Of a stretch of 64,000 nucleotides of DNA, positions 21,351-55,160 are shown piece after piece. Within the stretch, counting starts at the first letter, position 1, and each line of letters opens with the position of its first letter. Source of the DNA: Iphione sp. A-MEVVRFRX5 (lineage: Eukaryota); contig OZ320319.1 in NCBI GenBank assembly GCA_976226885.1, positions 19,282,001 through 19,346,000 on the forward strand, given 5' to 3'. The notes beneath the pieces were generated by a model that was given only the letters and a program-made list of their open reading frames with translations, had not been told where the DNA came from and did not search any database. The position numbers were made by a program, and so were the translations under genes.

Positions 21351-21377
21351 AGTGGGTTTAGTTTTGTTCAAAGTTGA

Positions 21378-32084: not shown

Positions 32085-32377
32085 TTATTCAGTTTGCGAA
32101 CAAATGATCGTATTAATGTGGGTATCGACAACGCTTTGATGGCGAACTAGAGCCTCAAATTGCAAGTGGAAGTTTCCGAAAGACTGTTTTGTCATGCTTT
32201 GGTCATGTTGCAAGCTTCTTATTGCGTGACGACAGTGTACGATTTCATCATTTGCCTGGTGTAGTTGCTGTTGGAGTAACTTGTTTTCACTCTGTAGATT
32301 CAATGTGATCGTTCGAAGATAGCTGAGTTCTGCTAGTACATTCTGGATTGCGTCAGCCGGGATCGGAACTGGTTGAA
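32085..32377 (-). CDS. Terminal exon of coiled-coil cargo gene X (paralog of 53735-54054)
   Basis: tttacttccag|TT phase 1 acceptor. LRTITLNLQSENKLLQQQLHQANDE...AIRSL...TKQSFGN aligns ungapped with gene Y at 20/49 identities. Confidence 0.7.
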
Positions 32378-35217
32378 CTGGAAGTAAAGTGCAAAATTAG
32401 TTTGAGGTTGTAGAATGGCGTTCATTTATTGCGGTAGGCACTAGAACAATATGAGGAGTATTATTGGTTATTTGTATAGTTATGAAGTGTTTGTGAAGAC
32501 ATGGTAGCATGTCAGGTCGACTGTGTTCGCATCAGGTTGCGTCCAAGTATCTGAGGAAGAGGATGACTTATTGAACATTTTTTTTTAGTTAATATTAAAA
32601 TTAAACAACTGTGGTTTGGTATGAGTCATGGTAGGTAGAGAGAGAGACTAAGGGAGTCATCAGAGTGGTATTGTGGTTAAGGTTGCTTGTTTTGGGGTCC
32701 TCTGTTGATGATGCGCCAATTGTGTTATCTATAGGCTGACTTAGTATCAAAACAGAAATATATGAATATAATTTGGTAACTACTCCGGTGGGACATGTCG
32801 TAGTTTACTGACAACGTGGTAGGTGTGGAAGGTCCGTACATTTGGGTATATACATGGGTATAACTTAGGCAACTGCTTCGGCGGGATATGCTGTATCTTA
32901 CTTTTAGCGGTGCGGGTGTAGATGGTTCTCACACGCGGGGTATAGTGCTTTAGGTTTAGGGGATAGTAGCAGCAGGCATTCTTGGGGATAGGAAGGAGGT
33001 GAGGCCGGGAAACATGTGAAGGACGGAAATAATTGGGCGCAAATTGTTTTGGTTGGAGGTGTTGTATATTCTAAGGTAATACTGTAGCATAGGGTCTTCT
33101 GAACCAACAAAAGTTAATAGGTGGATAGAGTTTAGTGGAGTGCTATGAGGACACAGTTGTAATAATAAAGACTAAGACTGATATATGTTTAGAAATCTAA
33201 AGAAGTTTCCTTTAAAGATTGCTATAGTGTTCATACTTACAAGTAGTAATAGTTTGTGGGTCCTGACTGGTGGGCAGTAGAGGCACATCGTTTGTAGTCC
33301 AAGTGGCTGAAAGAGAATTAAATCAACAAAGATATAGTCCGAGATGAAACATTACGTATAAGTGGAATACATTGGAAATATGGAAGAAGTAATCACATAC
33401 GAGTTGAATGTATGGTTTATATAAAGTGAGTATTGTTTGCTGGTAAGAATATCTTCACTGGTTGTACGTGTGTTCGTTGTGTTCTGTCTAAGTGTGTAAG
33501 GCGATATGTGTGAAGACTACGGCGTTGTAGCGGCTGATGCGAACCGCATTGAAAATATTGGACGATGTGTTTATATGAGTGTAGTTTGGAAGTTCGCAGA
33601 AATAGTACTTGGAACATTGTATACTGTGTAGTTTGCGGGTAATTAGTACATACCTGTGTCTTTGGTAAGTATCTGTTTAGGTTTCCATACAACTCGTCGG
33701 ATGTCCATATTAGTATAGAAGCCAAGGTGATAAACTGTTAATGGCTTATTGTAAGATTCTTGTATACGACTGTGGTAGTAAATAGTACAATTAGTATGTG
33801 GTAGCGGTACTCGGCGAGAAATGCTGCGAACAAGTAAGTAGAGAGTGGTAGGCGTGGTCCAAACGACCAGAGCGGAACAGTACCGTGTGCAAAGATGTTC
33901 GTGAACTGTGATTGGTTCAAAACTGACCAATCACATAAACGATATGTAAGAGCGTAGTGTGATGACTGAAAACTTAAAAGAGGGTGGGAATATATCTGTT
34001 TTTAACTATATAAGTTTTGTGTTTTAATAATTCAAACATTATGTATAAGAATGGAAAGAGTGTGTGTGTAGTTGAATATTTTTTAGAGTGAATCGGTGTG
34101 AATTTATCAACTATTTATAAGTATGGTTAAAGTATAAGTTTAATTGCAAAATTTTAGGGTTTCGCTGTCAAACGTAACTGTTTTAATAGAAATAGTTTAT
34201 TATTTTCGTGTTTAATATTTAGTGTTACTGTGCACTATTCTTAAAAGGAATGCTAATAGTTTGAATGAGGAAAACCTGAACGCTAATAAAGCAATTAGAA
34301 GAAGTAAAAGGCAAATTAAGCATTGGTGGAAGCGTATACGAATTTAGTCAATAAACTGTTATAGAAGATTTTGTAGACTTGTTTGTTAATATGGTATTAG
34401 TTTTTATCATTTTTAACGAAGTATGTGGGTATTGGAATAAGAAAAATAGTTTTTAAATGTTTTTCAAAAGATGGTAGGGATTGGTTCCGGTCGGTTTGGG
34501 TTTGTGGATTCTTAGCCGCTTTTAAGTTTATGTTTTTATTTGTGCGTTGTACGCTGTGTCGGTTTTTACAGTGTAAGATTTCCGTGACAGATAGTAGAGT
34601 ACTTTGATGTTCTGGTCTTTTTACTTTATGGCGTTGTGGTCGGTATGACACATAGGGGGATGTTTCTACAACAACAAGAGAGTTTGTATTGATGAACATT
34701 TTTTGTGTCGGCAACTGAAGATTAGACAAGTAGGTTTTATATAAAAAGGGTGGGTGTTAGCACAGAGTCCGCATTGTTCATGGTGGCAGCCGAGGTCGGT
34801 AGTGTTCGTGTTATAGTTGGTTGGGTTTGTGGAGAGCAATTCAGAAAGAAGAGGATAGGTGTGTAATGTGAAGGAGGTTAATATTACTGCGACGTCAAAA
34901 GTTGATATTGTTGTGTACGCGTTGTATTTAAATAAGTATAGTTTGGGGTTATGACAGAGTAAAACCACATGTTGTGAAACAATTTTATGTGAAAAGGTTG
35001 GTTGTTCGCAAGTTTATTAGTTTATTGTTGATTTGTAAATGTAGGCTTTTTTCAATCAAAGACTGTGTTGGTGTGCTATCAGTGAGACGATAACCAAATA
35101 ATAGGACGGATAAAAATATAGAGAAAAGTTATTGTTCTTTTATGTGGTATAATGGGAAAGTATTAAGTTTTTGACATTGAATATAAAGTGTTGAAAAAAG
35201 AACAGCTGTACTTTACA

Positions 35218-38200
35218 ATGAAAGTTTTACAAGGTTCTCGGAGTCAAAATAGTAGTGTATATAATCACAGTGGTCGTGGCAATCAATGTACCGCTATTGC
35301 TGCCGGCTGTTTGTTGTATGTGTTCGTTTTTTGTAATGGCATTGTAAATAGTAGACATGTAGACGATGTCCTCGACTTTGGCGACTTTCTGTATACACAA
35401 ATTCGCCGGAGAGTAACTGCTTTGCAATTGACTCCTTGTGAGTTGCCACAATTATTGATTGTAAATAGTAGAAAGATTTTTTTTGATGTGGTGAAATGTT
35501 TTGTTGGTGTACACATACCAAAAGGCGATTCCATATATTTTGCGTTTGTGAAAGCATTCTCGATTAGTCCGTTCTGTATATTTGTTGCACAGCATTTGTC
35601 TATTGCAGTATATTGCAGAACTGGCGTTTACTATATGTTTGATTCTCATGCGCGTTCTAAAAAAGGTTTCCCGTCGGCAGAAGGTACAGCTGTTCACATA
35701 TGTTTTGAAGATTTTTATGAACTTATTGGTCATATAGAAAAGTTATATTATAGTTCACAACAATTCCAGTATGAAATTTCTGTGGTGCATATGGTCCAAA
35801 ATGGATTGTCTGATACGTTCTGTGAAATATTTGTAGATATAAATTCTATTTATCCCAACCGGTTCATTGCTATGGAAGTGATAGAGAATTTGAGGTGTTT
35901 GGTAGGTAAGGATATGTTTCATACAACAGAAAAGTCATGTAGATCTAATGTAAGTGAATCGGTACAAGGAAACAGGTTAACGGATCGGAACGGTAATATT
36001 TCTGGCTTTATCAAAACAACTGGCATTTCTCAGACGTTTAGTAAGACTAAATCCGATCAGAAGAAAAGCAGAAATGGAAGTGCTCGTGTAAAAGAATTTG
36101 TCCAAAAGAGTAGTAACAGTCAAGAAAAAACGGGGCTACAATCTGAAAGGAAGAACACGTGTAGTACAACTAGAAGTGTCAAGAAAAGTAAGTCTCTGAA
36201 AGAACCGAACTGCAGAAGTGTGTTGATAAACAGTGATGGTATGCTTGTACCTAACTTAGTAGCGTTACAACATACCAAAGGTAGAAAAAAGGCTGTTTGT
36301 GGTAAAACTAAAGTGGTCAATGATAAATCCGACATTTTAAATCAAATAATTGGAAACTGTAGTAGTGAAAAGAGTAGGAAGCAGAAGCGGTCTATCAGGG
36401 TAGTTAATTCACAGAATGCAAAAGTTCGCAAGAAAACAAATGGTAATGTTGTTTCTTCTGATACAGATTCAACCGCAAATGAGTTAGACAAGTGTATCAA
36501 GAGTTTTTTTCTTAACATTGAAGAAGGGCCACATTATTGTTGTTGCATGTGTAGCCAGGTGTGGTTTATTCATAGTGTTCGGGAAGTCACTTCAGAAATT
36601 TACTATCATATTCAACATGTAGTAGGTGGTAAGTCTCAAAATGAATGCAAATATATTTGTCAAACATGTTCCAAAGCGATTAGTGACCGTCGTTTACCTC
36701 GTATCTGTTACATGAACGGATTTATATTGCCGACTGTTCCCCATGAGTTACAAATTACTGTCGATGAAGCACGTCTTGTAGCTCGGCGTCTCGCATTTAT
36801 GCAAATACGTTATTTACCCCGTGGTTTTCAATACAGTTTGAAGGGACCTGTTGTAAATGTTTTGGCACGTGTAGAGGATACTGTTGTTCAGTTGCCGAGG
36901 TACATAAATACGGCAGGTACTACATGTGTTCGGTTGAAGAGAAAACTTTCAAACAAGCATGCATACAGGCAATTCAATGTGCGCCCTGTTAATGTGTTGA
37001 AGGCTCTAGAGTGGTTAGTGAAGAATAGTCCTTTGTATAAAGAAGATAATGTTATCATTGATTACGATTGGTTAACGCAAACAGTTAATGCATTGATGAA
37101 CGATGGACCAAGTTTGACAGCTGAATCTGTAGATGAAGCAGCCAATGAGCGTTGTTACAGCGAAAGTTGTAATACTAAGGAACTTGACAATGATGATAGC
37201 GATAGTGATGAAGATAACTTCTCTGAAGTTGATGTCACTGAGAAGGATTTGCAAATGCAAAGTCTTCTAGATGCTCATACTGGGGACTTGTTTTTCGATA
37301 TTGCTCCGGGTGAATACAATATGCCATTGAGTTTAATTTATGACGCAAATGGAGAGTATATGGCTTATCCTCATTTGTATGGTGGAATTAATCCGTATGT
37401 GAATTGTTCGATCCGTTATTCTGATGTGTGTAAATTTGAATTGCGAAATGTTGATAGACGTATCGCAACAAATTTGGAAAATATTTTCTTCAAATATAAA
37501 AAATATCAGAGTCTTTTGATTAAGGCAGTATCGCGTTTTGCACTTCGTCGTAGTAGAAATGTAGGTCATTATTCCAAGATTGATGTGGCAACACGCGAAA
37601 GCAGAGAGAGGCTTCGAACATCTGATGAAGGGTTTTATATGTATAACAGGTTGAGGAATACTCCACAATATTTTGAGCGAGCACAAAGTAATGTTATGGC
37701 TATGATTAGACAACTTGGGTTTCCTACGTGGTTTATGTCTTTGTCTGCTGCTGATCTGTACTGGATACCATTGCTGCGAACACTTGGTCTTTTGATAGAT
37801 AATGTTTTGTATACAGATGAGGAAATAGAAGAATTTTCATGGACTAAGAGGGCTCAGTTAGTTAGTAGTGATCCGGTAACTTGTGCCAGATATTTTGATT
37901 TTCGCTTTGATAAGTTTTTGAGAGGAGTTTTAGAGAGTAAGGCAAATCCCATAGGTGAAGTGGAAGATTATTTCTACCGAGTGGAGTTTCAACATCGTGG
38001 AAGTCCTCATGTTCACATGTTAGTTTGGTGCAAGAATAATCCTCGGTATAGCACAGATAAGCAGAATAGTGTTGAAGTTGCTGAATATATTGATAAGTTT
38101 GTGAGTTGTTCAAGTTCTGTGGAGGACAGCAACAAGAAATTTATCGATCTACAGACGCATAAACATTCTCGAACATGTAGAAAACGTGGCCAGGCTATTT

Positions 38201-41200
38201 GTCGGTTTCACTTTCCTGTTTTTCCTATGCGAAAAACTGAAGTGTTAGAGCCTTTGAAGGATGATTTGGTAGCAATTCGTGATTTTCGACGTGTTTGTGA
38301 ACTTATGAATGATGAAGATAAATTAAGTTCTTTTTCATTTGACGATTTTTTAAAATACTTGGAATTAACCGAAGAGAGGTATATTAGTGCAGTTCGGACT
38401 TCATTAACATCATGGAAAGTGTTTTTGAAAAGAGAACCGAAAGACATACGCGTAAATCCTTATATGAAAAATTTGTTAGGGGTTTGGAAAGCAAATCATG
38501 ATATATCTTATGTTATTGATCCGTATGCTTGTGCAGTTTATATTGTAAGTTATATAAACAAACAACATCGTGGTTTAAGTGTTTTGCTGTCGCAAATATT
38601 AAAAGAATCGAAATCCAAACGGTGTAGTTTGCAAGAACAATTAAAAGAAGTAGGTAAGTGTTTTATAAATAGTACTGAAATAAGTGCGCAGGAGTGTATT
38701 TACATGCTTTTAGGTATGTCAATGACCAAAACAAGTGTTAGTGTGATATATTTAGATACGAAAATTGCTTCCGAAAGACAGCGTATCTTGAAAACCGACA
38801 GTCAACTAGAACAGTTAGAAGATAATTCTACAGATATTTTTGTTGATGATAAAATGGTACTATACCAAGCACGACCTGCATTTTTCGAAGCATGGTGTTT
38901 AGGAGACTATTGTTCTCTCATTACCTTAAGTAAAAGTACAAGTAAGAATGTTTCTGGGTTGGATGATGCGCAAGGAGGCAGTTTTATTCTTTATCGTTCA
39001 AATTCTAAAGTATATAAACGACGTGTAAAGCGGGCTGTGTTGAAATTCAATTGTCCGTCACTTGAAAATAACGAAGAACAATATTTTCGTATTATGCTAT
39101 TGTTATGTTTACCTTGGAGGACAGAACTACCACCAGATAGCAAGTTTACGCAATTGTTTCATAACTTAGAAAGTATTGTTCAACAACAAATAGTAGAAAA
39201 GTTTTGTGTGTTTGTGCAACAGCCAATTCATAATTTGTTAAAACAAATAAATGATTTAGAAAGTAAAAATGTTGACACAAGTACAGTTGCACCAAATACA
39301 GGTTATGAAAATAGTCGTGACAAAGAGGAAATGGACATTCAAGATGATTGTTTGTTTTTCATGGTAAGAGATGATCCGCAGACTGATGTAAATTTTGAAA
39401 AAGATGGTCATGTGTGTGTGCGTCCATCAGTTATTGATAGCATTTGGAGCCGTGGTGAAATGTTGGATAATGTTGCTTTGCTCACCTGTGAGCAACAAAT
39501 AATTTATAAACACATCATGAAAGAGGTGCTGTACGATGCGAATAAATTGCATTTGTTCATAACAGGTGGTGCTGGGGTTGGGAAATCATTGTTATTGAAA
39601 ACAATATACCATAGCTTACAACGTCATTTTAACTTGGCGAGTAATATGTCAGTTTCGGCTCTCTCAGTTTTGTGTGTAGCACCAACTGCTAAAGCTGCGT
39701 TCTTGATAGGTGGGAAAACTATCCACAGTGCCTTGCAGGTATGGAATTATAAGCAAATAGTAGATATGTCAGACAGTACCCTTAATACGCAGTTGTTGAA
39801 ATTTAACGATCTGAAAGTCTTATTGGTCGATGAAGTTTCGATGGTTGGAGCAAACATGCTTGAACGAATACACATACAACTACAAAGACTCAAAGGCAAT
39901 AAACAATTGTTTGGAGGTATACATATTATTTGTTTTGGTGACTTGTATCAACTGCAGCCTGTCAAAGATAGTTGGATATTTTTAGATACAAGTGGTTTAT
40001 CAAGATTGGCTCCAAATTTATGGAGAGAACATTTCCAAATATTTGAATTACAGACTATTGTTCGTCAAGCCAACGACAAAAACTTTGCACAGCTTTTGAA
40101 TCGGTTAAGAGAAGGTTTGCAAACGGAGCAAGACTACAAGATGCTTGAAAGTAGAATCATTGGCAATGTACAAGAGATACCAAGTGGTACTGACTATTTA
40201 TTTTCAACAAACGAAAGCGTAAATAGACATAATGATTTAGCTTTTGAAAATTGCATGTCTGAAAAAACTTGTATTTATGCAAAAGATGTTATTTTGAATC
40301 ATAACTTGAAAGAATCTATTGAAAAGTGTATCGCCTCGACTAGTTTAAGTTTGAAAGACACTGGCGATCTAATGAAAGTTTTAAAAGTAGGTGTTGGTCT
40401 ACGGTACGACATAACTTATAATATGGATACGGAGGATGGTTTGACAAACGGAACTACTGGTACTTTGACAAAAATTCAATATTTTGATGGAATTTCTCAA
40501 CCAAGTATTCTGTGGTTGAAGTTCGATGATCCCAATGTTGGGAAGAATCAGAGGTTGAAGTACCACAAAAGGTTTGCTGTGAACCACGACCCTAGTTGGA
40601 CTCCTTTGTTTGTTGTTAGTAGAAAGTTTGTACTGAAGGGGGAAGTGTACCGCACTCAGTTTCCGCTGCGTCAGTGCAGTGGACGTACTGTACACCGAGC
40701 GCAAGGTACTACCATGTCTTCAGTTGCGGTTCAGTTGTCGCGACCAATTAACGCTCATACGTATTATGTTTGTTTTAGTAGACTGCGCAGTTTGAGTGGA
40801 TTGTATTTACTATCATTTGATAGAACTAAAGTGACAGTGGATGATCGAGTTGTTAAAGAAATGGAACGTTTAAGAAAAGACCGTCAGGTCGCGTTGAATT
40901 TTGTAGATATCCCAATAATTCGAAATGCTTTTGCTGTCACTTTTTTAAACGCTCAATCGTTATTTGGTCATTTTCGCAGCGTTTGTTGTGATAAGTATCT
41001 TTTGAGTAGTACTGTGTTATGTTTCGCTGAAACACGTTTTAAGAGGGATGAAAGTCCTGCAAAGTTTCCTATTATTGGTTTTAAGAATGTGTTTGCATCA
41101 GAACCACAGTTCAATACATCTTTTCGGCCGTCTCATGGTTTAGCTGTATATGTAAGAACAGATTTGACCATTGTAAATACTTACGGTTACCGGTATAATA

Positions 41201-41577
41201 ATTGTGAATATTTGCTGGTGGATTTAAGATGTAGTAGTGAGTTTGAGCTAACAATCTTTATTGTATACAAGGCACCACGTGCATCAATCGAGTCATTCAA
41301 AACTTTACTTCTTACAGCTGTTCCTTATCTACCAAAGAATAATTCGTTAGTTATAGTAGGGGACGTAAATATGTGTTTGTTTGAAGAACGGAATTTAGTT
41401 TTTTTAAATTGGTTGGAAACGACATACGGAGTTCAACAAAAGGTTACAGAAGCTACTACGGATGGAAACACATGTTTAGACTGGTTTTTAACTCAAATGA
41501 GTGTACAAATGTCCATTAGTTATTGTCCCTTTTCATACCATAATGCAATTACTGGAGTTTTACAAGAATTGTGTTAG
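35218..41577 (+). CDS. Helentron Rep/helicase polyprotein (~2119 aa): herpes-tegument-like (peptidase C76) DUB, Zn finger, HUH Rep, PIF1 helicase, APE/EEP endonuclease
   Basis: DUB: GNQCTAIA...FDSHAR. Cys cluster ~36540-36720. Rep motifs PTWFMSLSAAD, VEFQHRGSPHVH, YIVSYINK. Helicase motifs GGAGVGKS, DEVSM, GDLYQL, TIVRQ, QFPL..TVHRAQG. EEP motifs FLNAQSL, CFAET, GDVN, CLDW, SYH. The ORF is uninterrupted. Confidence 0.95.
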   Translation: MKVLQGSRSQNSSVYNHSGRGNQCTAIAAGCLLYVFVFCNGIVNSRHVDDVLDFGDFLYTQIRRRVTALQLTPCELPQLLIVNSRKIFFDVVKCFVGVHIPKGDSIYFAFVKAFSISPFCIFVAQHLSIAVYCRTGVYYMFDSHARSKKGFPSAEGTAVHICFEDFYELIGHIEKLYYSSQQFQYEISVVHMVQNGLSDTFCEIFVDINSIYPNRFIAMEVIENLRCLVGKDMFHTTEKSCRSNVSESVQGNRLTDRNGNISGFIKTTGISQTFSKTKSDQKKSRNGSARVKEFVQKSSNSQEKTGLQSERKNTCSTTRSVKKSKSLKEPNCRSVLINSDGMLVPNLVALQHTKGRKKAVCGKTKVVNDKSDILNQIIGNCSSEKSRKQKRSIRVVNSQNAKVRKKTNGNVVSSDTDSTANELDKCIKSFFLNIEEGPHYCCCMCSQVWFIHSVREVTSEIYYHIQHVVGGKSQNECKYICQTCSKAISDRRLPRICYMNGFILPTVPHELQITVDEARLVARRLAFMQIRYLPRGFQYSLKGPVVNVLARVEDTVVQLPRYINTAGTTCVRLKRKLSNKHAYRQFNVRPVNVLKALEWLVKNSPLYKEDNVIIDYDWLTQTVNALMNDGPSLTAESVDEAANERCYSESCNTKELDNDDSDSDEDNFSEVDVTEKDLQMQSLLDAHTGDLFFDIAPGEYNMPLSLIYDANGEYMAYPHLYGGINPYVNCSIRYSDVCKFELRNVDRRIATNLENIFFKYKKYQSLLIKAVSRFALRRSRNVGHYSKIDVATRESRERLRTSDEGFYMYNRLRNTPQYFERAQSNVMAMIRQLGFPTWFMSLSAADLYWIPLLRTLGLLIDNVLYTDEEIEEFSWTKRAQLVSSDPVTCARYFDFRFDKFLRGVLESKANPIGEVEDYFYRVEFQHRGSPHVHMLVWCKNNPRYSTDKQNSVEVAEYIDKFVSCSSSVEDSNKKFIDLQTHKHSRTCRKRGQAICRFHFPVFPMRKTEVLEPLKDDLVAIRDFRRVCELMNDEDKLSSFSFDDFLKYLELTEERYISAVRTSLTSWKVFLKREPKDIRVNPYMKNLLGVWKANHDISYVIDPYACAVYIVSYINKQHRGLSVLLSQILKESKSKRCSLQEQLKEVGKCFINSTEISAQECIYMLLGMSMTKTSVSVIYLDTKIASERQRILKTDSQLEQLEDNSTDIFVDDKMVLYQARPAFFEAWCLGDYCSLITLSKSTSKNVSGLDDAQGGSFILYRSNSKVYKRRVKRAVLKFNCPSLENNEEQYFRIMLLLCLPWRTELPPDSKFTQLFHNLESIVQQQIVEKFCVFVQQPIHNLLKQINDLESKNVDTSTVAPNTGYENSRDKEEMDIQDDCLFFMVRDDPQTDVNFEKDGHVCVRPSVIDSIWSRGEMLDNVALLTCEQQIIYKHIMKEVLYDANKLHLFITGGAGVGKSLLLKTIYHSLQRHFNLASNMSVSALSVLCVAPTAKAAFLIGGKTIHSALQVWNYKQIVDMSDSTLNTQLLKFNDLKVLLVDEVSMVGANMLERIHIQLQRLKGNKQLFGGIHIICFGDLYQLQPVKDSWIFLDTSGLSRLAPNLWREHFQIFELQTIVRQANDKNFAQLLNRLREGLQTEQDYKMLESRIIGNVQEIPSGTDYLFSTNESVNRHNDLAFENCMSEKTCIYAKDVILNHNLKESIEKCIASTSLSLKDTGDLMKVLKVGVGLRYDITYNMDTEDGLTNGTTGTLTKIQYFDGISQPSILWLKFDDPNVGKNQRLKYHKRFAVNHDPSWTPLFVVSRKFVLKGEVYRTQFPLRQCSGRTVHRAQGTTMSSVAVQLSRPINAHTYYVCFSRLRSLSGLYLLSFDRTKVTVDDRVVKEMERLRKDRQVALNFVDIPIIRNAFAVTFLNAQSLFGHFRSVCCDKYLLSSTVLCFAETRFKRDESPAKFPIIGFKNVFASEPQFNTSFRPSHGLAVYVRTDLTIVNTYGYRYNNCEYLLVDLRCSSEFELTIFIVYKAPRASIESFKTLLLTAVPYLPKNNSLVIVGDVNMCLFEERNLVFLNWLETTYGVQQKVTEATTDGNTCLDWFLTQMSVQMSISYCPFSYHNAITGVLQELC

Positions 41578-41914
41578 TAAACATAAACAGTATATTTTGG
41601 TGTTCATGTGATGAGAAACATTGTAGTGGTCGTAGTAAACAAATGGCATTTGTGTTTGATGTAGTTGTGGTACATTCTGTTTTTCAATGAATTTGGTTGA
41701 ACAACATCAAATTAGGAGTTCGCTACAGTGTGCGTTTGTAAAAACCATATTGTATACAGTGTGTTGCTTGGTTGTCATCATGAACAATGAGTTGTATGGC
41801 GGAAGAATGGTTCAATAGTAGCAGTTAGAAACGTATATACATGAATAAAATACAAGTGCATGTGTTAATGTAGGATTGAAGTTACCTCATTGAATAAGGT
41901 TATTCAGTACATCA

Positions 41915-42183
41915 ACCAATCAGAATCAGCTGTTAGTTGGGCAGTACTGCTATTGGTTTAGGAGGTGTGGTTTGAATACTAATGGGGAGTACCGAGTTGA
42001 ACAACCTGGTGCCGACGCAATGTTGCTTGCATATATTAAGTAAATGACATCATTCCCAGGTCAACCAATCACGAGCGAGGCAGATGTTCGAAAAACAGAG
42101 TGCTTCTATTGGTCAGTAAGCTGCTATTAGCTTATCAAGTGTGGCCTTATATAAGTAGATCTTTCCGAATGGATTAGTTCAGT
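41915..42183 (+). promoter_or_regulatory. Promoter of the RPA-like gene
   Basis: Multiple CCAAT/ATTGG boxes (~41916, 41951, 42065, 42108), TATATAAG at 42148 and Inr-like TCAGT at 42179-83. Confidence 0.65.
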
Positions 42184-42246
42184 GTTAACGTGCTCAAATT
42201 CTGCTACTGGCGGGTAATTCTAGTCAGTACGTTGACAGTTTGGAAG

Positions 42247-44414
42247 ATGGCTTTTGCGGCTGCACGTTCACCAGTTAAAGCAATGCAAAGAACAATTGCA
42301 ATTGCGGATTTGAACGATGTTTGGAACGTTCCACAAGAATTGACGTGCGTTGTTGTGAAATTGGAAGAAGACAGAGGCGAGCTGGCCTTTGGGCCAGACA
42401 AGAACTCGGTTTCTATTCTTCGACGAAAGTTTGTCTTGGCTGATGGTAGCGGTGTCGTGTGCGGACATGCCTACGTGAAGGTGGACTTCGAAGAAGGACA
42501 AACCGTTATTCTGAAAGACTTTGCTGTAAAATGTGGTGAAGTGAAAATCCTCAAAGGCACTACAATTTCAAAGTAAGTTGCAATAGGTTTTGTCTGTTTC
42601 GTTTTTGTCGGAAAACTTTGGTATCGTTAATTGAATAACGTGGATGCAATATAACTCATAGTAATTTGATAGGAATGTTTTGGTTGTAAACTAGTGGACA
42701 TGTTTGTGAAGTGACGCATTTATTAATCGGAATAGTAAAAGTTTCAGTGGTTTTGTAGTTGGGTTTTGATATTGTCGCATTGGTTACAAATTCCTTCCTG
42801 AATTGTATAAAGTGCTATGTTAAAAGTAATAAGTTTCATGGTGTTGATATTATGTTTCAGAGCTACTCCATTGGAAATATCGAATGAACAAGAAGTCAAT
42901 GCTATTGATTTGTTCAAGAGTGACAACACTACTGGTGTGCCTATGAAGACTGTATCGGAGGTGATGAAGTTATCGGATACTGAAACCGTATCCTTTTCGG
43001 GAAACTTATTGAATGTAAGTTTGTACATGGAAGATGTTTTTTGTATTAATCTGCTGGCACTATTTTTTAGTTGAAGAAGTTTCAATTACTATCAGCGTAA
43101 AGACAGTTTAAGCGATGTGTAAAGAACTTTTTAGTATCAAAATAAGTTGTGCGATCTGTTGCTGTATTATATGTGGATTTAACTACAAGTGAGAGAAAAC
43201 TTAGTAATATCAATGTTAATGTTCTGTTGTTGTTTATTCAAAAGGTTGCGCAGTTAAGGACTGTTTCAACAACAAGAGGCCAAAAATATATCCGGGAGTT
43301 GACAATAACTGACGGCAAAGAGACCATTGGTGTCAGTGTGTGGGGAGCAGCTGCGACTATGACGTTTGAAGTTGGTAGGATGTACCGTTTTCGGAATGTT
43401 GTCTACAAGTACAACAGTTACTCAGAAAGTTTCGAAGCTACAGTGAACCATCCAGATGAAATACAGGTAAGGTTTTTTAGAAACACATTGTTAGTGTTCA
43501 GATGAGGTGTTGTTCGAGTAAAAACAATGTATTGAATTGGTTAGTTTAAAGATATAAGGTAAATAGTTTAGACAAGATCTACAAAATACATAGGTTTCAG
43601 ATATGTGAGTAGATGTATTTGGTTGCATTTGTGTTTTTGTTTTAGTTTTGATGTGATAAAAGTTAACTAAGTGGTTGTGCGAAGTCGTAGAAATGGAGAA
43701 TTGTATTTTATACACAACAAGAGAGAGATAGAGAGGAGTGAAAGAGAAAGAGAGAGAGAGAGAATTGTAAGATAGTGCGTTGTTTTGTGACCCCTCATGC
43801 AAGTCTACAACCCTCGGTTTTTCTTGACTGAACAGAGGGGTGTAGGAATATTGACTATGATTGTAGAAAGTAGGGCCATATATGTCAGCCTCCATGACTG
43901 GACTACTTTTAGGGAACATTTTATATAGGTAGTGTAATCATATTGTGTTTCTTTATTTGTACAGTTGATGACAGGCGGAGAATGTGGAGCATCGGCTGCG
44001 ATTAAAATTGATGGAATTGGGAAAGAAACAGAAGACAGTTGGAGGTTGTCGTGTGATGTCGTAAATATTCGCAAATACTTATGGGTGTTGAAAAGCGAAT
44101 TGCGGGATGCTCTTCAAGCGCCATTGACAACAGACAACGACATTATTCCGTATCTTCCGTTCTATCTGGATGGGCAAATCGAGGGAGAACAGCTTATAAA
44201 TATATCGCTTAAGGTTCCTAGTGATGTTCATGTAAAGAGTGCCGAAGTGGTTACTGCGGGTGCGAGTGATAGCTCACAGATGTTGTCTTCAGTTGATGGA
44301 AGTAGTAGCTGTTCGGAAAGCAACGTGCGTGGAACTACTTCAAAACGGCAGGCATGTGAAAAAACTTCAGAGCAACAAATTGCGACACCAGGCAAGAAAA
44401 GTAAAAAGAAGTAA
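42247..44414 (+). CDS. Four-exon OB-fold ssDNA-binding (RPA1-like) protein, ~383 aa; exons 42247-42572, 42861-43014, 43245-43466, 43965-44414
   Basis: All GT-AG junctions are phase-compatible (2, 0, 0) and total 1152 nt. OB-fold patterns RRKFVLADGSG and IRELTITDGKETIGVSVWG...EVGRMYRFRNV. Basic C-terminal NLS-like tail. Confidence 0.8.
43872..43938. repeat. 67-bp element, copy 1 (copy 2 at 51512-51578)
   Basis: agggccatatatgtcagcctccatgactggactacttt...ggtagtgtaat versus agggccacatatgtcagccaccatgaccggactacttt...ggtagtgtaat. Confidence 0.85.
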
Positions 44415-47400
44415 GATAACTGTGTAAAGTGTTGATAATACAGTTTGGTTTGTATTTGTTTGTAACGCAGTTTACACCGATGTCAGGACGTCGAAGTGGG
44501 GATGCAAAACAGGTTGTTGTGTATACCAGTTCATATAAAAATGTGTTTGTATTAGTGGAAAGTATAAGGTTTAGACGAACAGTTAACCAAAAAGGTTATA
44601 GCAGCTTTAAGGTGGGAGTTTATGATTACAATTAGAAGTAACAAAGTTTAGTTAGATTACATATGTTTAGCCTGTAAGTGTATTAGACTTTTTAGCGACA
44701 AGTGATATGAGTGTGGCATAAGTCAACTTGTTTTAAAGTTTATCTTTGTATAATTTTTGGAGAATAAAGAACATCCACCTAATTTGGGTGTGTAGCGTAG
44801 GTCGAAAATAAATAGAACACAATTAAACAAAAATTAATGAGAACAAGTGGTAATATGTTAAGAAACTATATATAATGTTGTTGACATAATAGCGTTTTAG
44901 GTAAAGTTATGTACTATGTAACAGTTTTGTATTATGGTTGTTTAGAGTGAGTGTTTAGTAGTGAGTGTTTAGAGTTGTGTATTTTAGTAGGAGTTGTAAG
45001 GTGTTTTACAACATAGAGGCTCAACGAACAGTAGTATAACTGCTGAAACAAGTGTGCATCTAAGTAACATACTAATATCCACCAAGGATTGTGCACAAGT
45101 GTGGCTGTGTGTGATACATTGTATTACATAGATACAAAATTGGTACGAGTGTTTATGCAAGAACATGTACTAGTTATATGGACAGTGGTAATGGAAATAT
45201 TGTGGTACTGAAAAGGATGTGTAGTATAATGAAGTGTTCAGCTGGAGTTTACTTCATTTAGAATTATGTAAAACTTGATATGAAAGCAATCAGTGGTGTT
45301 TGAGTTGGTATATCAGTCTGTTTAACATTCGATTACGTATGTATCGCCGGTTGTATCATGGTTTAGTGTTTAAGTTTTTAGTTTATAAGTTCAAGTAGAC
45401 TACTTTTGAAAGTTTATGAATAAAAGTTTTCAATCAACTTTTGTGTTACTTGAAGTATTGATGTTTACTATATAGTAGTTTACTTTTGTTAAGGATAATG
45501 TAAAAAATATATATCAAAAAAAGCGAAAACAATATTTTAAGATATACATTTTGGCGAATTTGTTACTGTTTAAGTGACAACTGTTAAAGTGCTGAATTAT
45601 TAATAGATAGTATGAATGTAAACAGTCAATAATTAGCAGTTTAGTGTTGTACGAAATTAAGTATATATTTCGCAGATTTAATAGTTAAACGAAAGATGAA
45701 ACTTAATGTTACTGTAATTGCACAAAATAGTAAATACTTATACAAGTATTGTATTAGAAGTTTTAAAACAAGCATGTAGTTCTTAATGCTTTTGTTTACG
45801 AGATTTGAGTGAACCGAGTGATAAGGTAGTGTTATTATAAATAAATAGCCTTAATATAAATTACAAGAACTAAAGTTCAGTTACCCTATCTCTTTTAAAA
45901 CGGCTGCCGGAAGTAGGTTGAAAGTAGTTCTATTAAGCAGTGTTTTCTTGGGTTTACAAAATAAGATATGTGTGCTCTGTGCTCTTCTCAGAAGGTTTTG
46001 TCATTTGAACATATACTGTAAGACTTTGAAAAAGTATTATAAAGAGTATATTGTTTTACCAGCGGTCGTCTTCTGTTAACTTGACTTAAGCATTGTTGGT
46101 GCAAAGATCAGTGATACTAGCGTAAAAATAGGCGACCCAACAACCGTGATTATACACAACAGTAGCAACAGCTTGACAGCTATGTGGGTGAAGCGTTATG
46201 GGTGATTTTTAATTTTGGGTGAATCGGTATTCAGGCACCTTGGTCTCTTCCCCCCACCTTCCTTCTTTGGTAGTAGTATGATTGACAGCCGCTGACGGTG
46301 GCAAGAGCCGGACGAAGAGTGTTAGTGAATATAGGTGGATTCGTTGGCCGCTTGTTAGCACGGTGACGATGTCGGCGGCGGCGAAAGGTGCTGTCGCGGT
46401 AGGTATACGGGGCAGCCGAGTTGCCTGTTTGTCCGGCAGCGCCGGCGGCAGGTGCTTTCGCAGTAGGCGTATGGGTAAGCTGCGGCGGCGGCTTGGTCGC
46501 CGGCCGTCTATGCACCCGGTGGCAGAGGTAATTTAATTAGGAAAATTTGGAAACAACAGAAAAACCTAATGCCGGTCCCGTTTCTGTCAAACGAATGTTT
46601 GCTCAGAAGAGATGTTCAGTTGTGATTTCTTTGCTGCCGTATTGTGCTCGTAGTTTGAATAATTTCACCTGTATTTGTTTGGTAGACTTCCTCTGGTGTT
46701 TTGTAAGCTGTCAAAATTGACAAGCTTGGTTCTAAGTGGCACAAGTCGTATACTTTTGTGCGGATGGCTATGCCATACGCACTCTATGTTGTGCAGGCTA
46801 GGTGTTAGTTGATATCCACGTAGCGGTGATGTGGTCTAGTACTGGCTGAAGAGGAGGGGTTGTCTTTCTCCAGGTACATTGAGAAGTCGCAGCGATGTAG
46901 TTTACCAGTAGGTTACTGCCGCTGCTCCCTTTACTACTTTTGCCGCATAATAGTTATTTGTCATTGTCTTACTTCTCTTATATTTCGTTTTAACACTCAC
47001 CTACTTTTGCATTTTTTTCGGTGGCGCTGCCGCTGCTACCGTGCGTATGTCGGGCCGGGCGAACAAGTAGTTGGGTGAAGTTACTATTTACTGTTCGGTC
47101 GGTCTACATATACACACATATGCAGTGATTGAGCGTAAAGACCTCGTGACACCCCGTGCTCATGATGCTTGCTTCGGCAACATTCTATTCATATTATTTA
47201 TTTCCAAGCACAAAATTCTGTGTTCGCATATTTTAGTGTCCCGGTTACACGTTTTTTGCGACATAGTGACAGCGTTAAAGTGGGAGTAATAGGGAACTTT
47301 GATATATACAACAGTCTTTCATTTTCGATTAAATCGGAATTAAAGAAATATTCGACAGTTTTAGATTGTATGTCGTTTGTGGACATAGGTACTCAGTGCA

Positions 47401-48917: not shown

Positions 48918-50309
48918 CTAAACATTTTGTTCTGTACGATGAACAAGATCCATAATTTGTAGTTGCATACGCAAAATCTGTTTGTTTCGAGCATGTTCTC
49001 TCTGCTGTAACGCATCAGTTTTGAGTTGAAGATGGTTAATATGTTGTTCTTTCTCTGCGAAAACATTCTGCACAGTCCTTATCGTTTTTTGTCTCCACTG
49101 CCGTCTGAACCGTTGTTCTGACTGCAAGTGTCGAGTCCACAGGTCGAGTCGTACTTGAAGCCGCTTGTTCTCTCGTGCCAGTACGCGCGCAGATTGTTCC
49201 GTTGTTTGTAGTTTGAAGGCTAAGCCACGGTTTCGTTCCTGTTGCTGTTCTAGTTTGCGATGTATTTTATCCAGAGTTTTATCTTGTTCATTGACACGCG
49301 TGTTCATCATATGTATGTGTTCACTAATGTGCTTGTAGAGTTGGTTGTCTTGTCGGCCGCAACAATCTGTAAAATATAACAACTTTTGTGAGTTTATACT
49401 AACTAGTTCTTGTTCACTTTGTTTCTGTAAAAAAATGTGTTGTGTAAAAATACATGAGGTTTCATTTATGTAGAAAACCACGTTACAAAATAATAGAGCA
49501 AGATTAGGTTTCAGCAACGTATAACGAAAGTGAAGCTATATCATTGTGCAAGTGTTGGAACTGTGTTGCAGGATTGTTTATACTTACTATGTTTGTTTTT
49601 TGGTTGGTTCTGTATGTTGTTGTCGACAGCATGAACATGTTGGTTTTGACGCGAGTTGTTTCCGTCTAGCTCGTAATCATCTGCAGTAGAGCAAGTAGAC
49701 ATTAGGTATTATAAATTATGAAGTACTGTGGATAATGTAAAGGTTGACAGAAGTAGAATTTTGAACTGCATATTAACAATATCCATAGGCGTTTTTGTTC
49801 TAAAAGTTGTGGCAAACTAATCATATTAAATTCTTTAAAATATTTAGTTTTTGTAGTAGATAACTTGTATTCTGAGAAGTTGTTAGACTTTTACAACAGT
49901 AGAATTAAGAAACATTTTTTGATGTTTGTAATAGGTTTTTCGCGAAAACAACGTGTGCCTATAGGTTCTGAATGAAACTTTTGTTACTTAGTTTGTTGAA
50001 ACTTACTGTTGTTGTTATGGTGGTTTTGATGTCGGATGTTTCGGTGTTGAATTTCGTCGTTGTTGTTGCTATGGCGATGAATGCGTTCGCGGTCGTTTTG
50101 GTGCCGGAAAGTTTCGCGTCTCAAAACGCGGTAGTCGGTGTCCTTGTCCATGTCAGATGAACTGGGGTGTATGCTTTGGTTGCGGACGTTGTCGTTGTTG
50201 TTGCTCTGGCGATAGATACGCTGACTGTCGCTTTGGTGTTGGAAAGTTTGGTGCGTCAAGAAACCGTGGTCGGTGGCTTCGTGGTCGGTGTCAGAGAAAC
50301 TATCTGGTT
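48918..50309 (-). CDS. Cargo gene Z (partial): Asn/His/Arg repeat exon 50309-50007 plus coiled-coil exon 49366-48918
   Basis: Acceptor tattgtag|AA, donor AACA|gtaagt and acceptor tattttacag|AT are all phase 1. Long heptad/QE-rich helix. Upstream exon unresolved. Confidence 0.6.
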
Positions 50310-51305
50310 CTACAATAGAAAATGAAGAATGGTGTTAAAAAGAAGTTCAAATGTTTGTTCCTGTACATATTAACGTAGACTTATTTGCCTGCATTTCAAG
50401 AAACCGTTCGGTTTTTGGCTTTGGTACCGAGGTTCGTAAGATTTCGTCAGTAAATGTGAAGAACAGACATATGTAGGCATGTGAGAAGTCGCACGGCCGG
50501 GACTGGTGGTTCTAAGCTCGAATACAGAACGCCCGCTCTCGGTTATGAATGACTGCACATACAAAAGTATAGTAATAGAAAATTTCGTAAACTTTTACAT
50601 CTGGGTGAGATTTGCTAACTACCGGATTATTTTAAGTTTATAGTTTTATATAGTAGATGTAATCAGTATGCGTTAATACGTATTCGATGTTCAAGTAATG
50701 GTTCCGTTTTAGTTGAGAAAAACGACGTAAACTTCTTAGGAAAAATTGATGTTTTTCCAGGAACAAGTGAATGAATGTCGCGGTCATAGTAGAGAGTGAA
50801 AGTGTGGTTAACTTCATATTGTCATGAATTGAATTTGTCACTAATTGATGTATTAATAGTGTCTAGTTATGTAAGGTTCACATCAAAGGTAAATGTCGGT
50901 GGAGCAGTTCCTAGGTGCTTGCTGATTAGGTTTGTTCACGAGAAGTAGTGTACAATTTGTGTGGATGTACACATTAAATATTGTGAAATATGTAGCTAGT
51001 TCAGTTATGAGCTGGGATTTCGTAAAAGTACACTGTACAATTTGTTATAATATTTAAGTACGCTAAATTAATAAAAATCTTGTTGCCTCAGCATTTATAA
51101 TCTTACCTTTGGAGTGAGTTTGTAGAGATTCTAGTTTGAGGAAATGTTGGTTCATTTTCCCAGTTTTTGAGGAACCTCCGGTGAAAAACTGTGGGTCCAA
51201 TATTTCAGTTAATTCAAGTGAACTGCGATGGCGAACGGTGGATGAAAGAAGTGTGTCTCCAGCCGAAAGAGTTTATATAGGTAGAGCCATCACTAGCGAC
51301 AGTCT

Positions 51306-51825
51306 GACAGAACGTTGTATGCCTGCCGGGATGCGAGCGCAGTGGTGATTGGCCGACCGAGAGTAGTTCGTCGAGAAGATAAGTGATGTCGTTGTGTTTG
51401 TAGACAAGCGCCTACGGCGCCTGCCTTATCAGGCGGAGGGATAGTATTTTACAGCCTTCCGTTCTGCCTGAGTGGACACAGGCGTATTGATACTAAATCT
51501 CGTAAAACCGCAGGGCCACATATGTCAGCCACCATGACCGGACTACTTTCGGCCACCGTTTTTTATGGGTAGTGTAATAAATATGCACAAGTGGCAATGT
51601 GATAGAACGTGGCACGTCTGCTGGGACGCAGACGGAGTTGTGATTGGCTGACCGAGTGTAGTTCGCTCAGAAGATAAGTGACGCGTCGTGTTTGCAGAAT
51701 ACGCCCAAACGACAGTGTGACAGGACATGGTGTGCCTGCCGGGACGTAGGCGGTGTGGTGACTGACCGGCCGAGTGTAGTTCATTGACAAGATAAGAGAT
51801 TTCGCTGTGTTTATAGAATACCCAT
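51306..51825. repeat. Three diverged ~118-bp GC-richer repeats, two with ATTGG boxes
   Basis: gacagaacg..gcctgccggga..gtgattggc.gaccgag.gtagttc..agataag units at ~51306, 51601 and 51719. Confidence 0.8.
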
Positions 51826-53734: not shown

Positions 53735-55160
53735 TCAGCATTCATCTTCCCAAGCTAAATCGATAGGAGGATTTCGAGAACATGAAGCCGAAAGCCGGGT
53801 TTCGAACGACTTTTGTGCATCTTTTATAGCCGTGATGTCTGTTTCAACATTAGAGAGCGACTGCTTTGTTTTGTCGTGGCCATTTAGTAAATAATTAATA
53901 GCGTTATGGTGTTCGATCGCCTCTTGGTTCATCTGTTGTATTTGGCTTTCTAAGTAGCTGTTTTTTTTCTGAAGATTCAATACCGTCATCCGCAAGTGAA
54001 GAACGTCCGTTGATAAGGTTTGTACAAGTTCGTTAAGTAAACGAACGTTGTCATCTGCAAATACATACAATAAACCTGTAAATTGTTTGCTGTATTTCAA
54101 AATTAGGAAAAAAATTAACAATGTATAACAATTTTGCTGCACTAACAACTGTGACAACTGTTAGGTGTAGTTAACTGGTAAGGATCAATCGCAGGTTACA
54201 AGAAACTTGGCTTCAATGTTTTAGTTCTTGGCGTTTGAATGTGATAAAACTTTTACTTTAGTTGTTAGAGATTGCCTTATTTAAGACGTTTAATATTTGT
54301 GCAAGTTATTTTCAGGTCCATCTTATTTACTTAAAGAAAATTAGAACTAGACAACTCCTACATGAATAACTGTATGTTGGCTATGGTCGAAGAAGTATTA
54401 CAAAATCATGTTCACATTGAAATATAACTTACAGTTTGTGCAATTTCTCGCTATGGACGTTGTCACTGTGATTTGCATTTGGTCGCTTGATGCACTATCT
54501 GAAAAGATGAATACCAATATGCATAATAGTCAAGTATTTATGTGTGAATCATAGTATTTACTTAAACACTTAATAGATAATAATAAGTGTTAGTTTCACT
54601 AAATTTAAACTTCTGCAGAAAAATAGTACGTTTTTTTTCAGTTTATAATTAGATATTCGGCAACAAATTGACATGATAAGTTCTAAAGGGTAAATCTCAA
54701 GATAACATGTCTTAGTCGTATGTACTCTGTCTTAGTTTGATCAATTCTGAGTGCTTGAACAAGTCTATCGATCTTAGTTTACGGAACAGACTAACAAAAA
54801 CAATAAACAAGTATTTCAATAATTTTGGAATTATGAATGTATGAGTTAGACAATCTATTTCGAGTGTACAATTCGTCTCAGGCAAATAGTAAATGATGTT
54901 GTTGTCGTAGTCGACATGACAGGAAGTCTTCATCATAAAACACTACTACATTAAATAACAACCGGTGTCGTTGGCTACTGTGGATTATTTCGAGAGCAAT
55001 CGAAACGGAAGAATTCTTTATGGTTCTAAAGAAACTATGATGTTGTATTGCGTCTAGTATTCATCACATACTTACGTGTAGAATCTGCGTGGGTTGTTGC
55101 GTTAACTGGTGGGCTGACATAAACTGGAGTAGGATGTACTATAGTGCTTCTGTCATCCAT
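53735..55160 (-). CDS. Coiled-coil cargo gene Y, 134 aa; exons 55160-55076 and 54054-53735
   Basis: ATG...ACAC|gtaagt phase 1 joins atttgcag|AT phase 1, total 405 nt. Paralogous to gene X. Confidence 0.72.

What the first reader, a model, noticed from the sequence alone, without database searches (positions are those of the whole stretch)
32085..55160. Paralogous coiled-coil genes on opposite arms of the element
Exon X (32085-32377) and exon Y (53735-54054) align without gaps at 20/49 identities (LR..LNLQ..N..L..Q..Q.N.E.....AI..L......TKQS..N). Both are - strand with phase 1 acceptors. Conserved protein but diverged DNA implies an old duplication under selection within the element. This ties the two arms together and argues against random host capture. 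No family recognised.
Basis: seen in the sequence. Interest (0 to 1): 0.72.

Follow-up and report, generated by a model that had tools for sequence, protein, structure and literature searches.

The report
Old duplicated coiled-coil gene beside Helentron
Two real, anciently duplicated copies of a small orphan coiled-coil gene sit on either side of a rolling-circle transposon (Helentron), one intact and one with a disabled first exon, but nothing shows that both are carried by the transposon.

Summary
X (32085-32377, -) and Y (53735-54054, -) share 20/49 gapless identities, extending to 26/85 (BLASTP E=1e-10). No shuffle reaches the score, even shuffles that keep the heptad pattern. Each is the other's only hit in the window.

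I extended it to a two-exon gene. Y has an ATG at 55160, a 28-codon exon 1, a C|GTAAGT donor, a 1021-nt phase-1 intron and exon 2, giving 134 aa. X has the homologous exon 1 (33491-33401), the same donor and phase, and a 1023-nt intron. X exon 1 has TTA in place of ATG and an in-frame TAA.

The introns keep no similarity. Exon identity runs codon position 2 > 1 > 3 (p=0.002), so both copies were under purifying selection for a long time. The product is one ~90-residue heptad helix.

No relative turned up among 1.84 billion proteins, Pfam, PDB, or viral and metagenome contigs. Six related Helentron copies (seven loci, 10-kb flanks) share only RepHel and RPA-like genes with the window.

X lies inside the G-rich strand-composition domain around RepHel (14-45.5 kb). 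Y lies outside it. No element termini were found. "Two arms of one element" is therefore unproven; a local or Helentron-associated gene duplication is more likely.

The parts
55076..55160 (-). Y exon 1: ATG at 55160 (G at -3, G at +4), 28 codons plus 1 nt, Pro/Thr/Ser-rich, followed by the donor C|GTAAGT whose G is at 55075
   Evidence: it is the first ATG after an in-frame stop; phase 1 matches the exon 2 acceptor
54055..55075 (-). Y intron, 1021 nt, GTAAGT...TTTGCAG, phase 1
53735..54054 (-).
   Evidence: a 141-codon open frame where 0.03 are expected locally
33401..33491 (-). X homologue of exon 1: TTA (33491-33489) where Y has ATG, in-frame TAA at 33419-33417, and the same donor context C|GTATGTGAT with G at 33400
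   Evidence: 8/20 identities, at the predicted position and phase
32378..33400 (-). X intron, 1023 nt, phase 1; no similarity to the Y intron; + strand G 28%, C 12%
32085..32377 (-).
35188..41577 (+). Intact 2129-aa Helentron RepHel: OTU-like (Herpes_teg_N), DUF6570, Helitron_like_N, PIF1 helicase, and a weak AP-endonuclease match
42190..44414 (+). RPA-like OB-fold ORFs (42190-42576, 43149-43505, 43965-44414). Apart from RepHel, these are the only window ORFs shared with related Helentron loci
13900..45500 (.). Strand-composition domain: + strand G about 26%, C about 12%, GC skew +0.3 to +0.5. It contains X, RepHel and the RPA-like ORFs but not Y

Best explanation
X and Y are two copies from an old DNA-level duplication of a small, lineage-restricted two-exon gene. 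The gene has an exon 1 of about 28 codons, a phase-1 intron of about 1.02 kb, and a terminal exon of 96-105 codons. Its product of about 130 aa is a short Pro/Thr-rich N-terminus followed by one unbroken helix of about 90 residues with 12 heptads, most likely a parallel coiled-coil dimer (inferred). Both copies were kept by purifying selection for much of the time since the duplication (shown semi-quantitatively). Y is intact. X has lost the start codon and gained a stop in the homologous exon 1, so it is probably a recent pseudogene or now uses a different first exon (inferred). The pair brackets a Helentron core (RepHel plus RPA-like genes) but is not a conserved Helentron accessory gene. 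X lies in DNA with the Helentron's unusual G-rich strand composition and Y lies in DNA without it. The likeliest history is therefore that one whole small gene was copied locally in association with Helentron DNA (capture, transduction or end bypass) and then retained, rather than one giant element maintaining two cargo paralogues. What the protein does is unknown. My best guess is a dimeric scaffold or adaptor, because the conserved residues are mostly on the solvent-exposed heptad positions.
For: Homology: with negative controls. Whole-gene duplication: the exon 1 homologue lies at the predicted place, 1023 versus 1021 nt upstream, with the same donor context and phase. On sequence alone it is only the third-best non-self hit in the window (E=0.3), but my estimate is that a chance hit would fall at the right place about 5e-4 of the time. 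Selection: identity by codon position is 49%, 60% and 34% (chi-square 12.1, p=0.0023). pS is 0.70 against pN 0.48, NG86 ratio 0.41 and ML 0.15-0.31, with dS saturated. The introns do not exceed shuffles and reach at most 29% identity on any near diagonal, a JC distance of at least 2.1. The position-2 JC distance is only 0.57. If X had drifted neutrally throughout, position-2 identity would be at most about 0.39 (inference from these numbers). Structure: the AF2 model of Y exon 2 is one helix over residues 2-92, mean pLDDT 90. Core residues fill 68-72% of a/d positions against 15-18% elsewhere in both copies, in the same register, with a conserved Asn at an a position. 16 of the 25 identities fall on non-a/d positions. 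Y intact: its 141-codon open frame compares with 0.03 expected locally. X defects. Not a conserved Helentron gene; no relatives. Composition: the X gene has skew +0.37 and the Y gene +0.11. RepHel four-fold sites have GC skew +0.31, against -0.24 to +0.24 in six relatives. Precedent: gene capture by Helentrons, and gene duplicates associated with their non-autonomous derivatives (PMC4067079).
Against: The element boundaries are unknown, so Y could still lie inside a very long 3' arm. The skew is patchy to the right and rises again to about 0.3 at 49.5-52.5 kb. Only one copy of this Helentron family was available. The nearest relatives are only about 40% identical in RepHel, so a lineage-specific accessory gene would escape the linkage test. 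If X was captured and then moved, its position 12-20 kb from Y would be a coincidence unless the copying was local. X's open frame is no evidence of current function: about 9 such frames are expected by chance on that G-poor strand. There is no expression evidence for either copy. An alternative first exon for X is possible but speculative (ATG 33617, donor at 33520). The dimer assignment rests on general coiled-coil rules, not on a test.
Confidence: 0.55

Rival explanations
1. One reading: X and Y are both cargo of one giant Helentron (at least 23 kb, perhaps about 42 kb), kept as two diverged accessory genes by selection acting on the element.
For: Both flank an intact RepHel, on the strand opposite to it. 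Both show a coding-constraint signature. X shares the RepHel domain's strand composition. Weaker skew persists to about 59 kb. Helitron-like elements up to 39.9 kb exist, and accessory genes have been captured repeatedly (PMC11417382; PMC4067079).
Against: No termini were found. Y's intron and flanks lack the skew. Y is 13-14 kb beyond the helicase domain, against less than 3.3 kb in 75% of elements. X exon 1 is disabled although RepHel is intact. No X/Y relative lies near six related Helentron copies, and none was found anywhere else.
Confidence: 0.15
2. Ordinary tandem host paralogues. A lineage-specific host gene duplicated in tandem long ago. The Helentron core and repeat arrays inserted between and around the copies later. 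The strand skew is a regional in-situ process unrelated to mobility.
For: The copies have the same orientation, the same exon-intron structure and a 21-kb spacing. Host genes lie nearby: a CBR4-like exon ending at 13871 and Death-domain ORFs. Four - strand ORFs on the right exceed chance expectation and could be a host gene cluster. No linkage to Helentrons elsewhere was found.
Against: X's intron and both of its 2-kb flanks carry the full skew (+0.34 to +0.42) with no island of host-like composition. RepHel's synonymous sites carry the same bias while the 2129-codon frame is intact. That points to a property acquired under selection in the element lineage rather than to decay in place (inference).
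Confidence: 0.25
3. No homology: two unrelated coiled-coil-like open frames that resemble each other through heptad periodicity and Q/N/L-rich composition.
For: Both give only generic, sub-threshold coiled-coil hits in Pfam. Open frames of this length are common on the G-poor strand around X.
Against: None of 20000 heptad-class-preserving shuffles reaches the observed score, z about 7. Two other coiled-coil ORFs of the window do not match the profile. The acceptor position and phase are shared, and a collinear exon 1 with the same donor exists. The codon-position pattern is that of coding sequence.
Confidence: 0.02

Closest known systems
Gene capture and transduction by Helitron-like elements (maize and bat Helitrons; histone gene fragments in Culex Helentron-Cq-32A; a transmembrane gene fragment in the Phytophthora proto-Helentron)
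   Same: It is a DNA-level copy that keeps its intron. It lies next to RepHel in DNA with the element's composition, a paralogue exists elsewhere, and the copy now carries a stop and lacks the start codon (PMC4067079).
   Different: A whole gene was copied rather than a fragment. The copy is very old (introns randomised) and was under purifying selection for a long time after the duplication. The putative parent lies only about 20 kb away. Inclusion within element termini is not shown.
Gene duplicates associated with non-autonomous Helentrons (DINE-1/HINE) at duplication breakpoints in Drosophila
   Same: The paralogues are in the same orientation, with Helentron-type DNA (RepHel plus arrays of tandem repeats) between and around them (PMC4067079; PMC7492417).
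   Different: Breakpoints cannot be traced here, because the flanks and introns have lost all similarity.
Recurrent Helentron accessory genes (OTU protease, RPA-like, AP endonuclease, SET and hypothetical ORFs of the proto-Helentron)
   Same: It is a small extra ORF close to RepHel, and X is upstream and divergent, as the RPA-like gene is in L001 and L003.
   Different: Those genes recur across families and species, whereas X/Y do not recur in six related copies or in any database searched.
Short parallel dimeric coiled coils of the leucine-zipper type with a polar Asn at an a position
   Same: The a/d heptad pattern is unbroken over about 12 heptads, an Asn at an a position is conserved in both copies, and a single long helix is predicted.
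   Different: There is no basic region and no match to any zipper family. Pfam bZIP_2 gives E=0.27 and RasGAP_C is below its threshold. The oligomer state is untested.

Membership tests
Cargo or accessory gene of a Helentron (HLE2) | Lies between the element's termini (12-16 nt subterminal inverted repeats, 3' stem-loop, T-T insertion site) | tested here: inconclusive
   Exact 13-mer inverted matches between the arms were at chance level or belong to a ~150-nt dispersed repeat. A 12-mer search allowing one mismatch and requiring a downstream hairpin gave 290 candidates, none distinctive. There are no notable hairpins in 44.3-48 kb.
Cargo or accessory gene of a Helentron (HLE2) | Recurs with RepHel in other copies or other genomes | tested here: not met
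   The X/Y profile HMM against six-frame translations of seven loci (six independent copies, 10-kb flanks) gave a best E of 0.43. Only RPA-like ORFs are shared. There are no true relatives among 1.84e9 representatives. Other copies within the source genome could not be searched.
Cargo or accessory gene of a Helentron (HLE2) | Shares the mutational and compositional history of the element | tested here: inconclusive
   X meets this: gene skew +0.37 and intron G 28%, C 12%. Y does not: gene skew +0.11 and intron G 17%, C 14%.
Helitron-type captured host gene | A paralogous (parental) copy exists outside the element, and the captured copy keeps genomic structure (introns) | tested here: met
   Y is a paralogue lying outside the strongly skewed domain. 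X keeps the intron position, phase and donor. Which copy derives from which, and whether X lies within the termini, is not established.
Tandem duplicate of a host gene | Same orientation and same exon-intron structure, with both copies in host (non-mobile) DNA | tested here: inconclusive
   Orientation and structure are met. Host status of the DNA around X is doubtful, because it carries the full skew with no host-like island.
Two-stranded parallel coiled coil | Continuous heptad repeat with a hydrophobic a/d core in a long helix | tested here: met
   Core residues fill 68-72% of a/d positions against 15-18% elsewhere, in the same register in X and Y. AF2 predicts a helix over residues 2-92, with pLDDT of 90 or more for 87 of 105 residues.
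Two-stranded parallel coiled coil | Oligomer number and strand orientation | not testable with these tools
   Only monomer prediction is available. 'Dimer' is inferred from the conserved Asn at an a position (established coiled-coil rules).
Pfam RasGAP_C (PF03836) and other named coiled-coil families | Score at or above the family's gathering threshold | tested here: not met
   X scores 23.1 bits against a cut-off of 26. Y scores 14.4 bits. All other hits are weaker and scattered over unrelated coiled-coil families. The best PDB profile search hit has E=0.09.

The most novel reading that the evidence does not exclude
A Helentron lineage that carries its own intron-containing coiled-coil accessory gene, unrelated to any known protein, in two anciently diverged and selected copies inside a giant (23-42 kb) element. 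The G-rich strand composition of that element would record long-term passage through a single-stranded intermediate.
Probability: 0.15. Interest if true: 0.7.

Novelty: new member of a known kind. Interest (0 to 1): 0.4.

Why it matters
If X, or both genes, travel with the Helentron, this would be a whole, spliced, selected accessory gene of a rolling-circle transposon with no known relatives. Whole-gene capture by such elements is considered rare, and the known Helentron extras (OTU, RPA, endonuclease) all have recognisable ancestry. If they do not travel with it, this is an ordinary old duplicate pair of an orphan gene in a transposon-rich region. Its main use would then be as a clean local example of conserved exons against randomised introns. 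The more unusual lead is the 30-kb strand-composition domain that the intact transposase shares with its non-coding surroundings. That domain could give a sequence-only way to delimit DNA with a long history in such elements.

Tried and rejected
- **Word search with Y exon 2:** no candidate found.
- **Profile search of 1.84e9 representatives:** five hits with E<1e-3. All are repeat proteins (TPR, PAS) or bacterial coiled coils matched in several short stretches, so I rejected them as relatives.
- **Viral and metagenome contig scans with the X/Y alignment:** pattern matches only, none confirmed.
- **PDB sequence profile search:** nothing below E=0.09.
- **Foldseek with the single-helix model:** one match at E=7, meaningless as expected for a lone helix.
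- **RasGAP_C hit of X (E=9e-5):** below the gathering score, and Y's best hits go to other coiled-coil families. I treated it as coiled-coil bias.
- **More homologous exons between the arms:** tblastx at two sensitivities found only exon 2, plus the weak collinear exon 1.
- **Intron alignment (global, local and diagonal windows):** indistinguishable from shuffles.
- **Element termini:** exact and one-mismatch inverted-repeat searches, with and without a 3' hairpin requirement, gave only chance-level candidates.
- **Extra RepHel fragments in the arms:** none.
- **L004 versus L005 for the size of a related element:** they are 99.9% identical to the ends of the fetched DNA, so they may be haplotigs and are uninformative.
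- **Context ORF 56591-57244:** no relatives, and the AF2 model has pLDDT 37, so no fold search was run.
- **dN/dS as a number:** dS is saturated and NG86 fails on the core, so only the direction is used.
- **Joined two-exon product:** never built or submitted.
- **Other constraints:** the N runs at 9753-9952 and 12138-12306 were left untouched. Nothing suggests human sequence.
Full report
**1. The observation**

On the - strand, the frame left by a phase-1 acceptor is open for 96 codons in X (32375-32088, stop TAA 32087-32085). It is open for 105 codons in Y (54052-53738, stop TGA 53737-53735).

- BLASTP extends the match to 26/85 identities with one gap, E=1e-10.
- The local alignment score is 113, against a maximum of 65 in 5000 shuffles.
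- Because both are coiled coils, I also shuffled within heptad classes (a/d versus the rest). The observed gapless score is 109, against a mean of -12.9, sd 16.5 and maximum 63 in 20000 trials.
- In tblastn against the whole window, each is the other's only significant hit, E about 3e-7.
- Two other coiled-coil ORFs of the same window (48921-49517 and 61087-62016, both -) do not match the X/Y profile (E=0.14 and 0.45).

The similarity is homology, not periodicity or composition.

**2. Gene structure**

A sensitive tblastx of the two upstream regions gave one weak collinear hit, 33488-33429 against 55154-55095. Reading the DNA turns this into a gene model.

Y:
- ATG at 55160. It is the first ATG after an in-frame stop, with G at -3 and G at +4.
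- 28 codons plus one base, then the donor C|GTAAGT (G at 55075).
- A 1021-nt intron ending in TTTGCAG.
- Exon 2 follows. The split codon is C+AT, and the product is 134 aa.

X:
- The homologous stretch runs 33491-33401 and ends in the same donor context, C|GTATGTGAT (G at 33400), in the same phase.
- The intron is 1023 nt, and the acceptor falls at the same alignment position as in Y.

On sequence alone the exon 1 match is weak: E=0.3, the third-best non-self hit in the window. I estimate the chance that one of the few best random hits falls within a few bases of the predicted place, on the right strand, at about 5e-4. The shared donor and phase add to that. So a whole two-exon gene of about 1.4 kb was duplicated at the DNA level.

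X's copy of exon 1 is not intact. It has TTA where Y has ATG, and an in-frame TAA (33419-33417) 18 nt before the donor. An upstream ATG (33617) with a mediocre phase-1 donor (33520) could rescue X, but that is speculation.

**3. Selection and age**

- Over 88 gaplessly aligned codons, identity is 43, 53 and 30 at positions 1, 2 and 3. Heterogeneity chi-square is 12.1, p=0.0023, and composition alone predicts 27%.
- Only the proposed frame is open in both copies.
- pS is 0.70, close to saturation, and pN is 0.48. NG86 gives 0.41 and ML gives 0.15-0.31, with dS well above 1. Only the direction is trustworthy.
- The introns are indistinguishable from shuffled sequence in global, local and diagonal-window tests. 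The best near-diagonal identity is 29%, a JC distance of at least 2.1. Position 2 of the exon stands at 0.57.

If X had drifted neutrally since the duplication, its share of the intron distance (at least about 1.1-1.25) would leave position-2 identity at or below about 0.39. The observed value is 0.60. This is my inference from those numbers: X was also under purifying selection for a substantial part of its history.

Evidence for present-day function differs between the copies. Y's 141-codon open frame is unexpected, with 0.03 expected in its 5-kb surroundings. About nine frames as long as X's are expected by chance on the G-poor - strand of the left arm.

**4. The protein**

- AlphaFold2 on Y exon 2 (by reference, single sequence) gives one helix over residues 2-92, mean pLDDT 90, and a disordered 13-residue tail.
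- Both copies have the same unbroken heptad register for about 12 heptads. Core residues fill 68-72% of a/d positions against 15-18% elsewhere.
- Both copies have an Asn at the same a position.
- 16 of the 25 gapless identities fall on non-core positions, for example the TKQS block.

From general coiled-coil rules I infer a parallel dimer with a conserved surface. That suggests a scaffold or adaptor, but the function remains a guess.

No family is recognised. Pfam hits are all below threshold and scattered. The PDB profile search gives nothing below E=0.09. Foldseek is uninformative for a lone helix.

**5. Relatives**

- The word search with Y found nothing.
- The X/Y profile against 1.84 billion representatives gave five hits at E<1e-3. 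All are repeat proteins matched in several short pieces.
- Viral and metagenome contig scans gave nothing.

The family is an orphan as far as these collections reach. The source genome itself appears to be absent from them: the best RepHel relatives are about 40% identical, and the window's own protein is not among the hits.

**6. Is it part of the Helentron?**

The 2129-aa ORF at 35188-41577 (+) is an intact Helentron RepHel with OTU-like, DUF6570, Rep, PIF1 and weak AP-endonuclease matches. RPA-like OB-fold ORFs follow at 42190-44414.

I fetched seven loci around its closest relatives, with 10-kb flanks. These represent six independent copies, from an ENA assembly and from Saccostrea.
- The X/Y HMM finds nothing in them; the best E is 0.43.
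- Among all window ORFs of at least 50 codons outside the RepHel ORF itself, only the RPA-like ones recur there; the remaining matches lie in other reading frames that overlap RepHel.
- There are no other RepHel fragments in the window.

No termini could be identified.

Size argues mildly against Y's inclusion. Y lies 13-14 kb beyond the helicase domain. In Repbase, 75% of autonomous Helitron-like elements have less than 3.3 kb there (maximum 16.8 kb), and 75% are shorter than 12.3 kb overall (PMC11417382).

**7. Composition**

From about 13.9 kb, directly after the stop of a host CBR4-like SDR exon, to about 45.5 kb, the + strand has G about 26% and C about 12%.
- RepHel's four-fold degenerate sites share the bias: GC skew +0.31, AT skew -0.16. 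Six relatives range from -0.24 to +0.24, with A more frequent than T.
- Because the 2129-codon frame is intact, I infer the bias was acquired under selection in the element's lineage rather than by decay in place.
- X's intron and both of its 2-kb flanks carry the full bias (+0.34 to +0.42). Y's gene and flanks do not (+0.11 to +0.15), and Y exon 2 sits where the skew is about 0.

So the two "arms" do not share one compositional history. X has long lived in Helentron-type DNA and Y has not. The skew to the right is patchy and returns to about 0.3 at 49.5-52.5 kb, so this does not strictly exclude a composite long 3' arm.

**8. Verdict**

The inference that the pair ties two arms of one element together and argues against host capture is not supported.

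| Reading | Probability |
|---|---|
| A local, probably Helentron-associated, whole-gene duplication that was retained for a long time. Y is now intact; X has a disabled first exon and is embedded in Helentron-type DNA. | about 0.55 |
| Plain tandem host paralogues, with the skew arising in situ. | about 0.25 |
| Chance resemblance. | about 0.02 (effectively excluded) |

Gene capture by Helentrons, and gene duplicates associated with their non-autonomous derivatives, are documented (PMC4067079).

**9. Limits**

- Only one copy of the element family was available.
- There is no transcript evidence.
- The joined 134-aa product was not submitted to any tool.
- The N runs were left alone.
- Nothing suggests human sequence.

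Noticed in passing
window 13900-45500 (patchy to about 59000): There is an extreme strand asymmetry: the + strand has G about 26% and C about 12%, GC skew +0.3 to +0.5, over about 32 kb. It starts right after a host gene's stop codon and covers tandem-repeat arrays, X, RepHel and the RPA-like ORFs. RepHel's four-fold sites share it (+0.31) while six related RepHel genes do not. It could be a mutational footprint of the single-stranded transposition intermediate, but the cause is unexplained.
   Followed up: partly
window 13200-13871 (+): This is the terminal part of a short-chain dehydrogenase. Pfam adh_short_C2 gives E=5e-47, and the best solved relative is human CBR4 (4cql, E=5e-53). The stretch is GC-rich (about 50%) and open for 223 codons. 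It is the last recognisable host gene before the skewed domain.
   Followed up: partly
window 4067-4480 (-) and 4567-5247 (-): Two adjacent ORFs have Death-domain matches (E=4e-12 and 9e-5). They are probably exons or tandem copies of a host death-domain gene.
   Followed up: no
window 48921-49535, 56591-57253, 61087-62082 (all -): Together with Y, these make four - strand open frames of at least 141 codons in 44.4-64 kb, where 0.24 are expected. Two are coiled-coil-like, and none has a Pfam family. ORF 56591-57244 has no word-search relatives, and its AF2 model is unusable (pLDDT 37). They may be a cluster of orphan genes.
   Followed up: partly
window 32378-33400 and 54055-55075: The X and Y introns are 1023 and 1021 nt long although no sequence similarity survives. 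This is either coincidence or a constraint on intron length.
   Followed up: partly
window 30380-30520 (+), 43800-43990 (-), 51440-51630 (-): A dispersed repeat of about 150 nt occurs in three copies at about 80% identity, one on each side of RepHel in opposite orientation. It is probably a small non-autonomous element, not the element's termini.
   Followed up: partly
window 16900-26100: There are several unrelated tandem-repeat arrays (periods 43, 99, 119, 143, 252 and 255, and units of roughly 500 nt), all on the G-rich strand. A recurring palindromic motif (GTGAAC...GTTCAC) starts the 252/255-nt units. This resembles the central repeats of non-autonomous Helentrons described in oysters (PMC7492417).
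   Followed up: no
L001 8977-9438 (-), L003 8957-9421 (-), L004 630-902 (-): In related Helentrons the RPA-like OB-fold gene lies upstream of RepHel on the opposite strand. In the window it lies downstream on the same strand. The accessory gene has therefore changed side and orientation within this clade.
   Followed up: partly
L004 17634-18683 (+), L005 8288-9337 (+): A 349-aa NADAR-domain ORF lies 470 nt downstream of a related RepHel. L004 and L005 are 99.9% identical over 17.8 kb. They are either haplotigs or a Helentron of at least 17.8 kb that carries this gene.
   Followed up: no
window 13975-14035: A hairpin with a stem of about 20 bp lies about 100 nt after the CBR4-like stop codon, at the very start of the skewed domain.
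   Followed up: no
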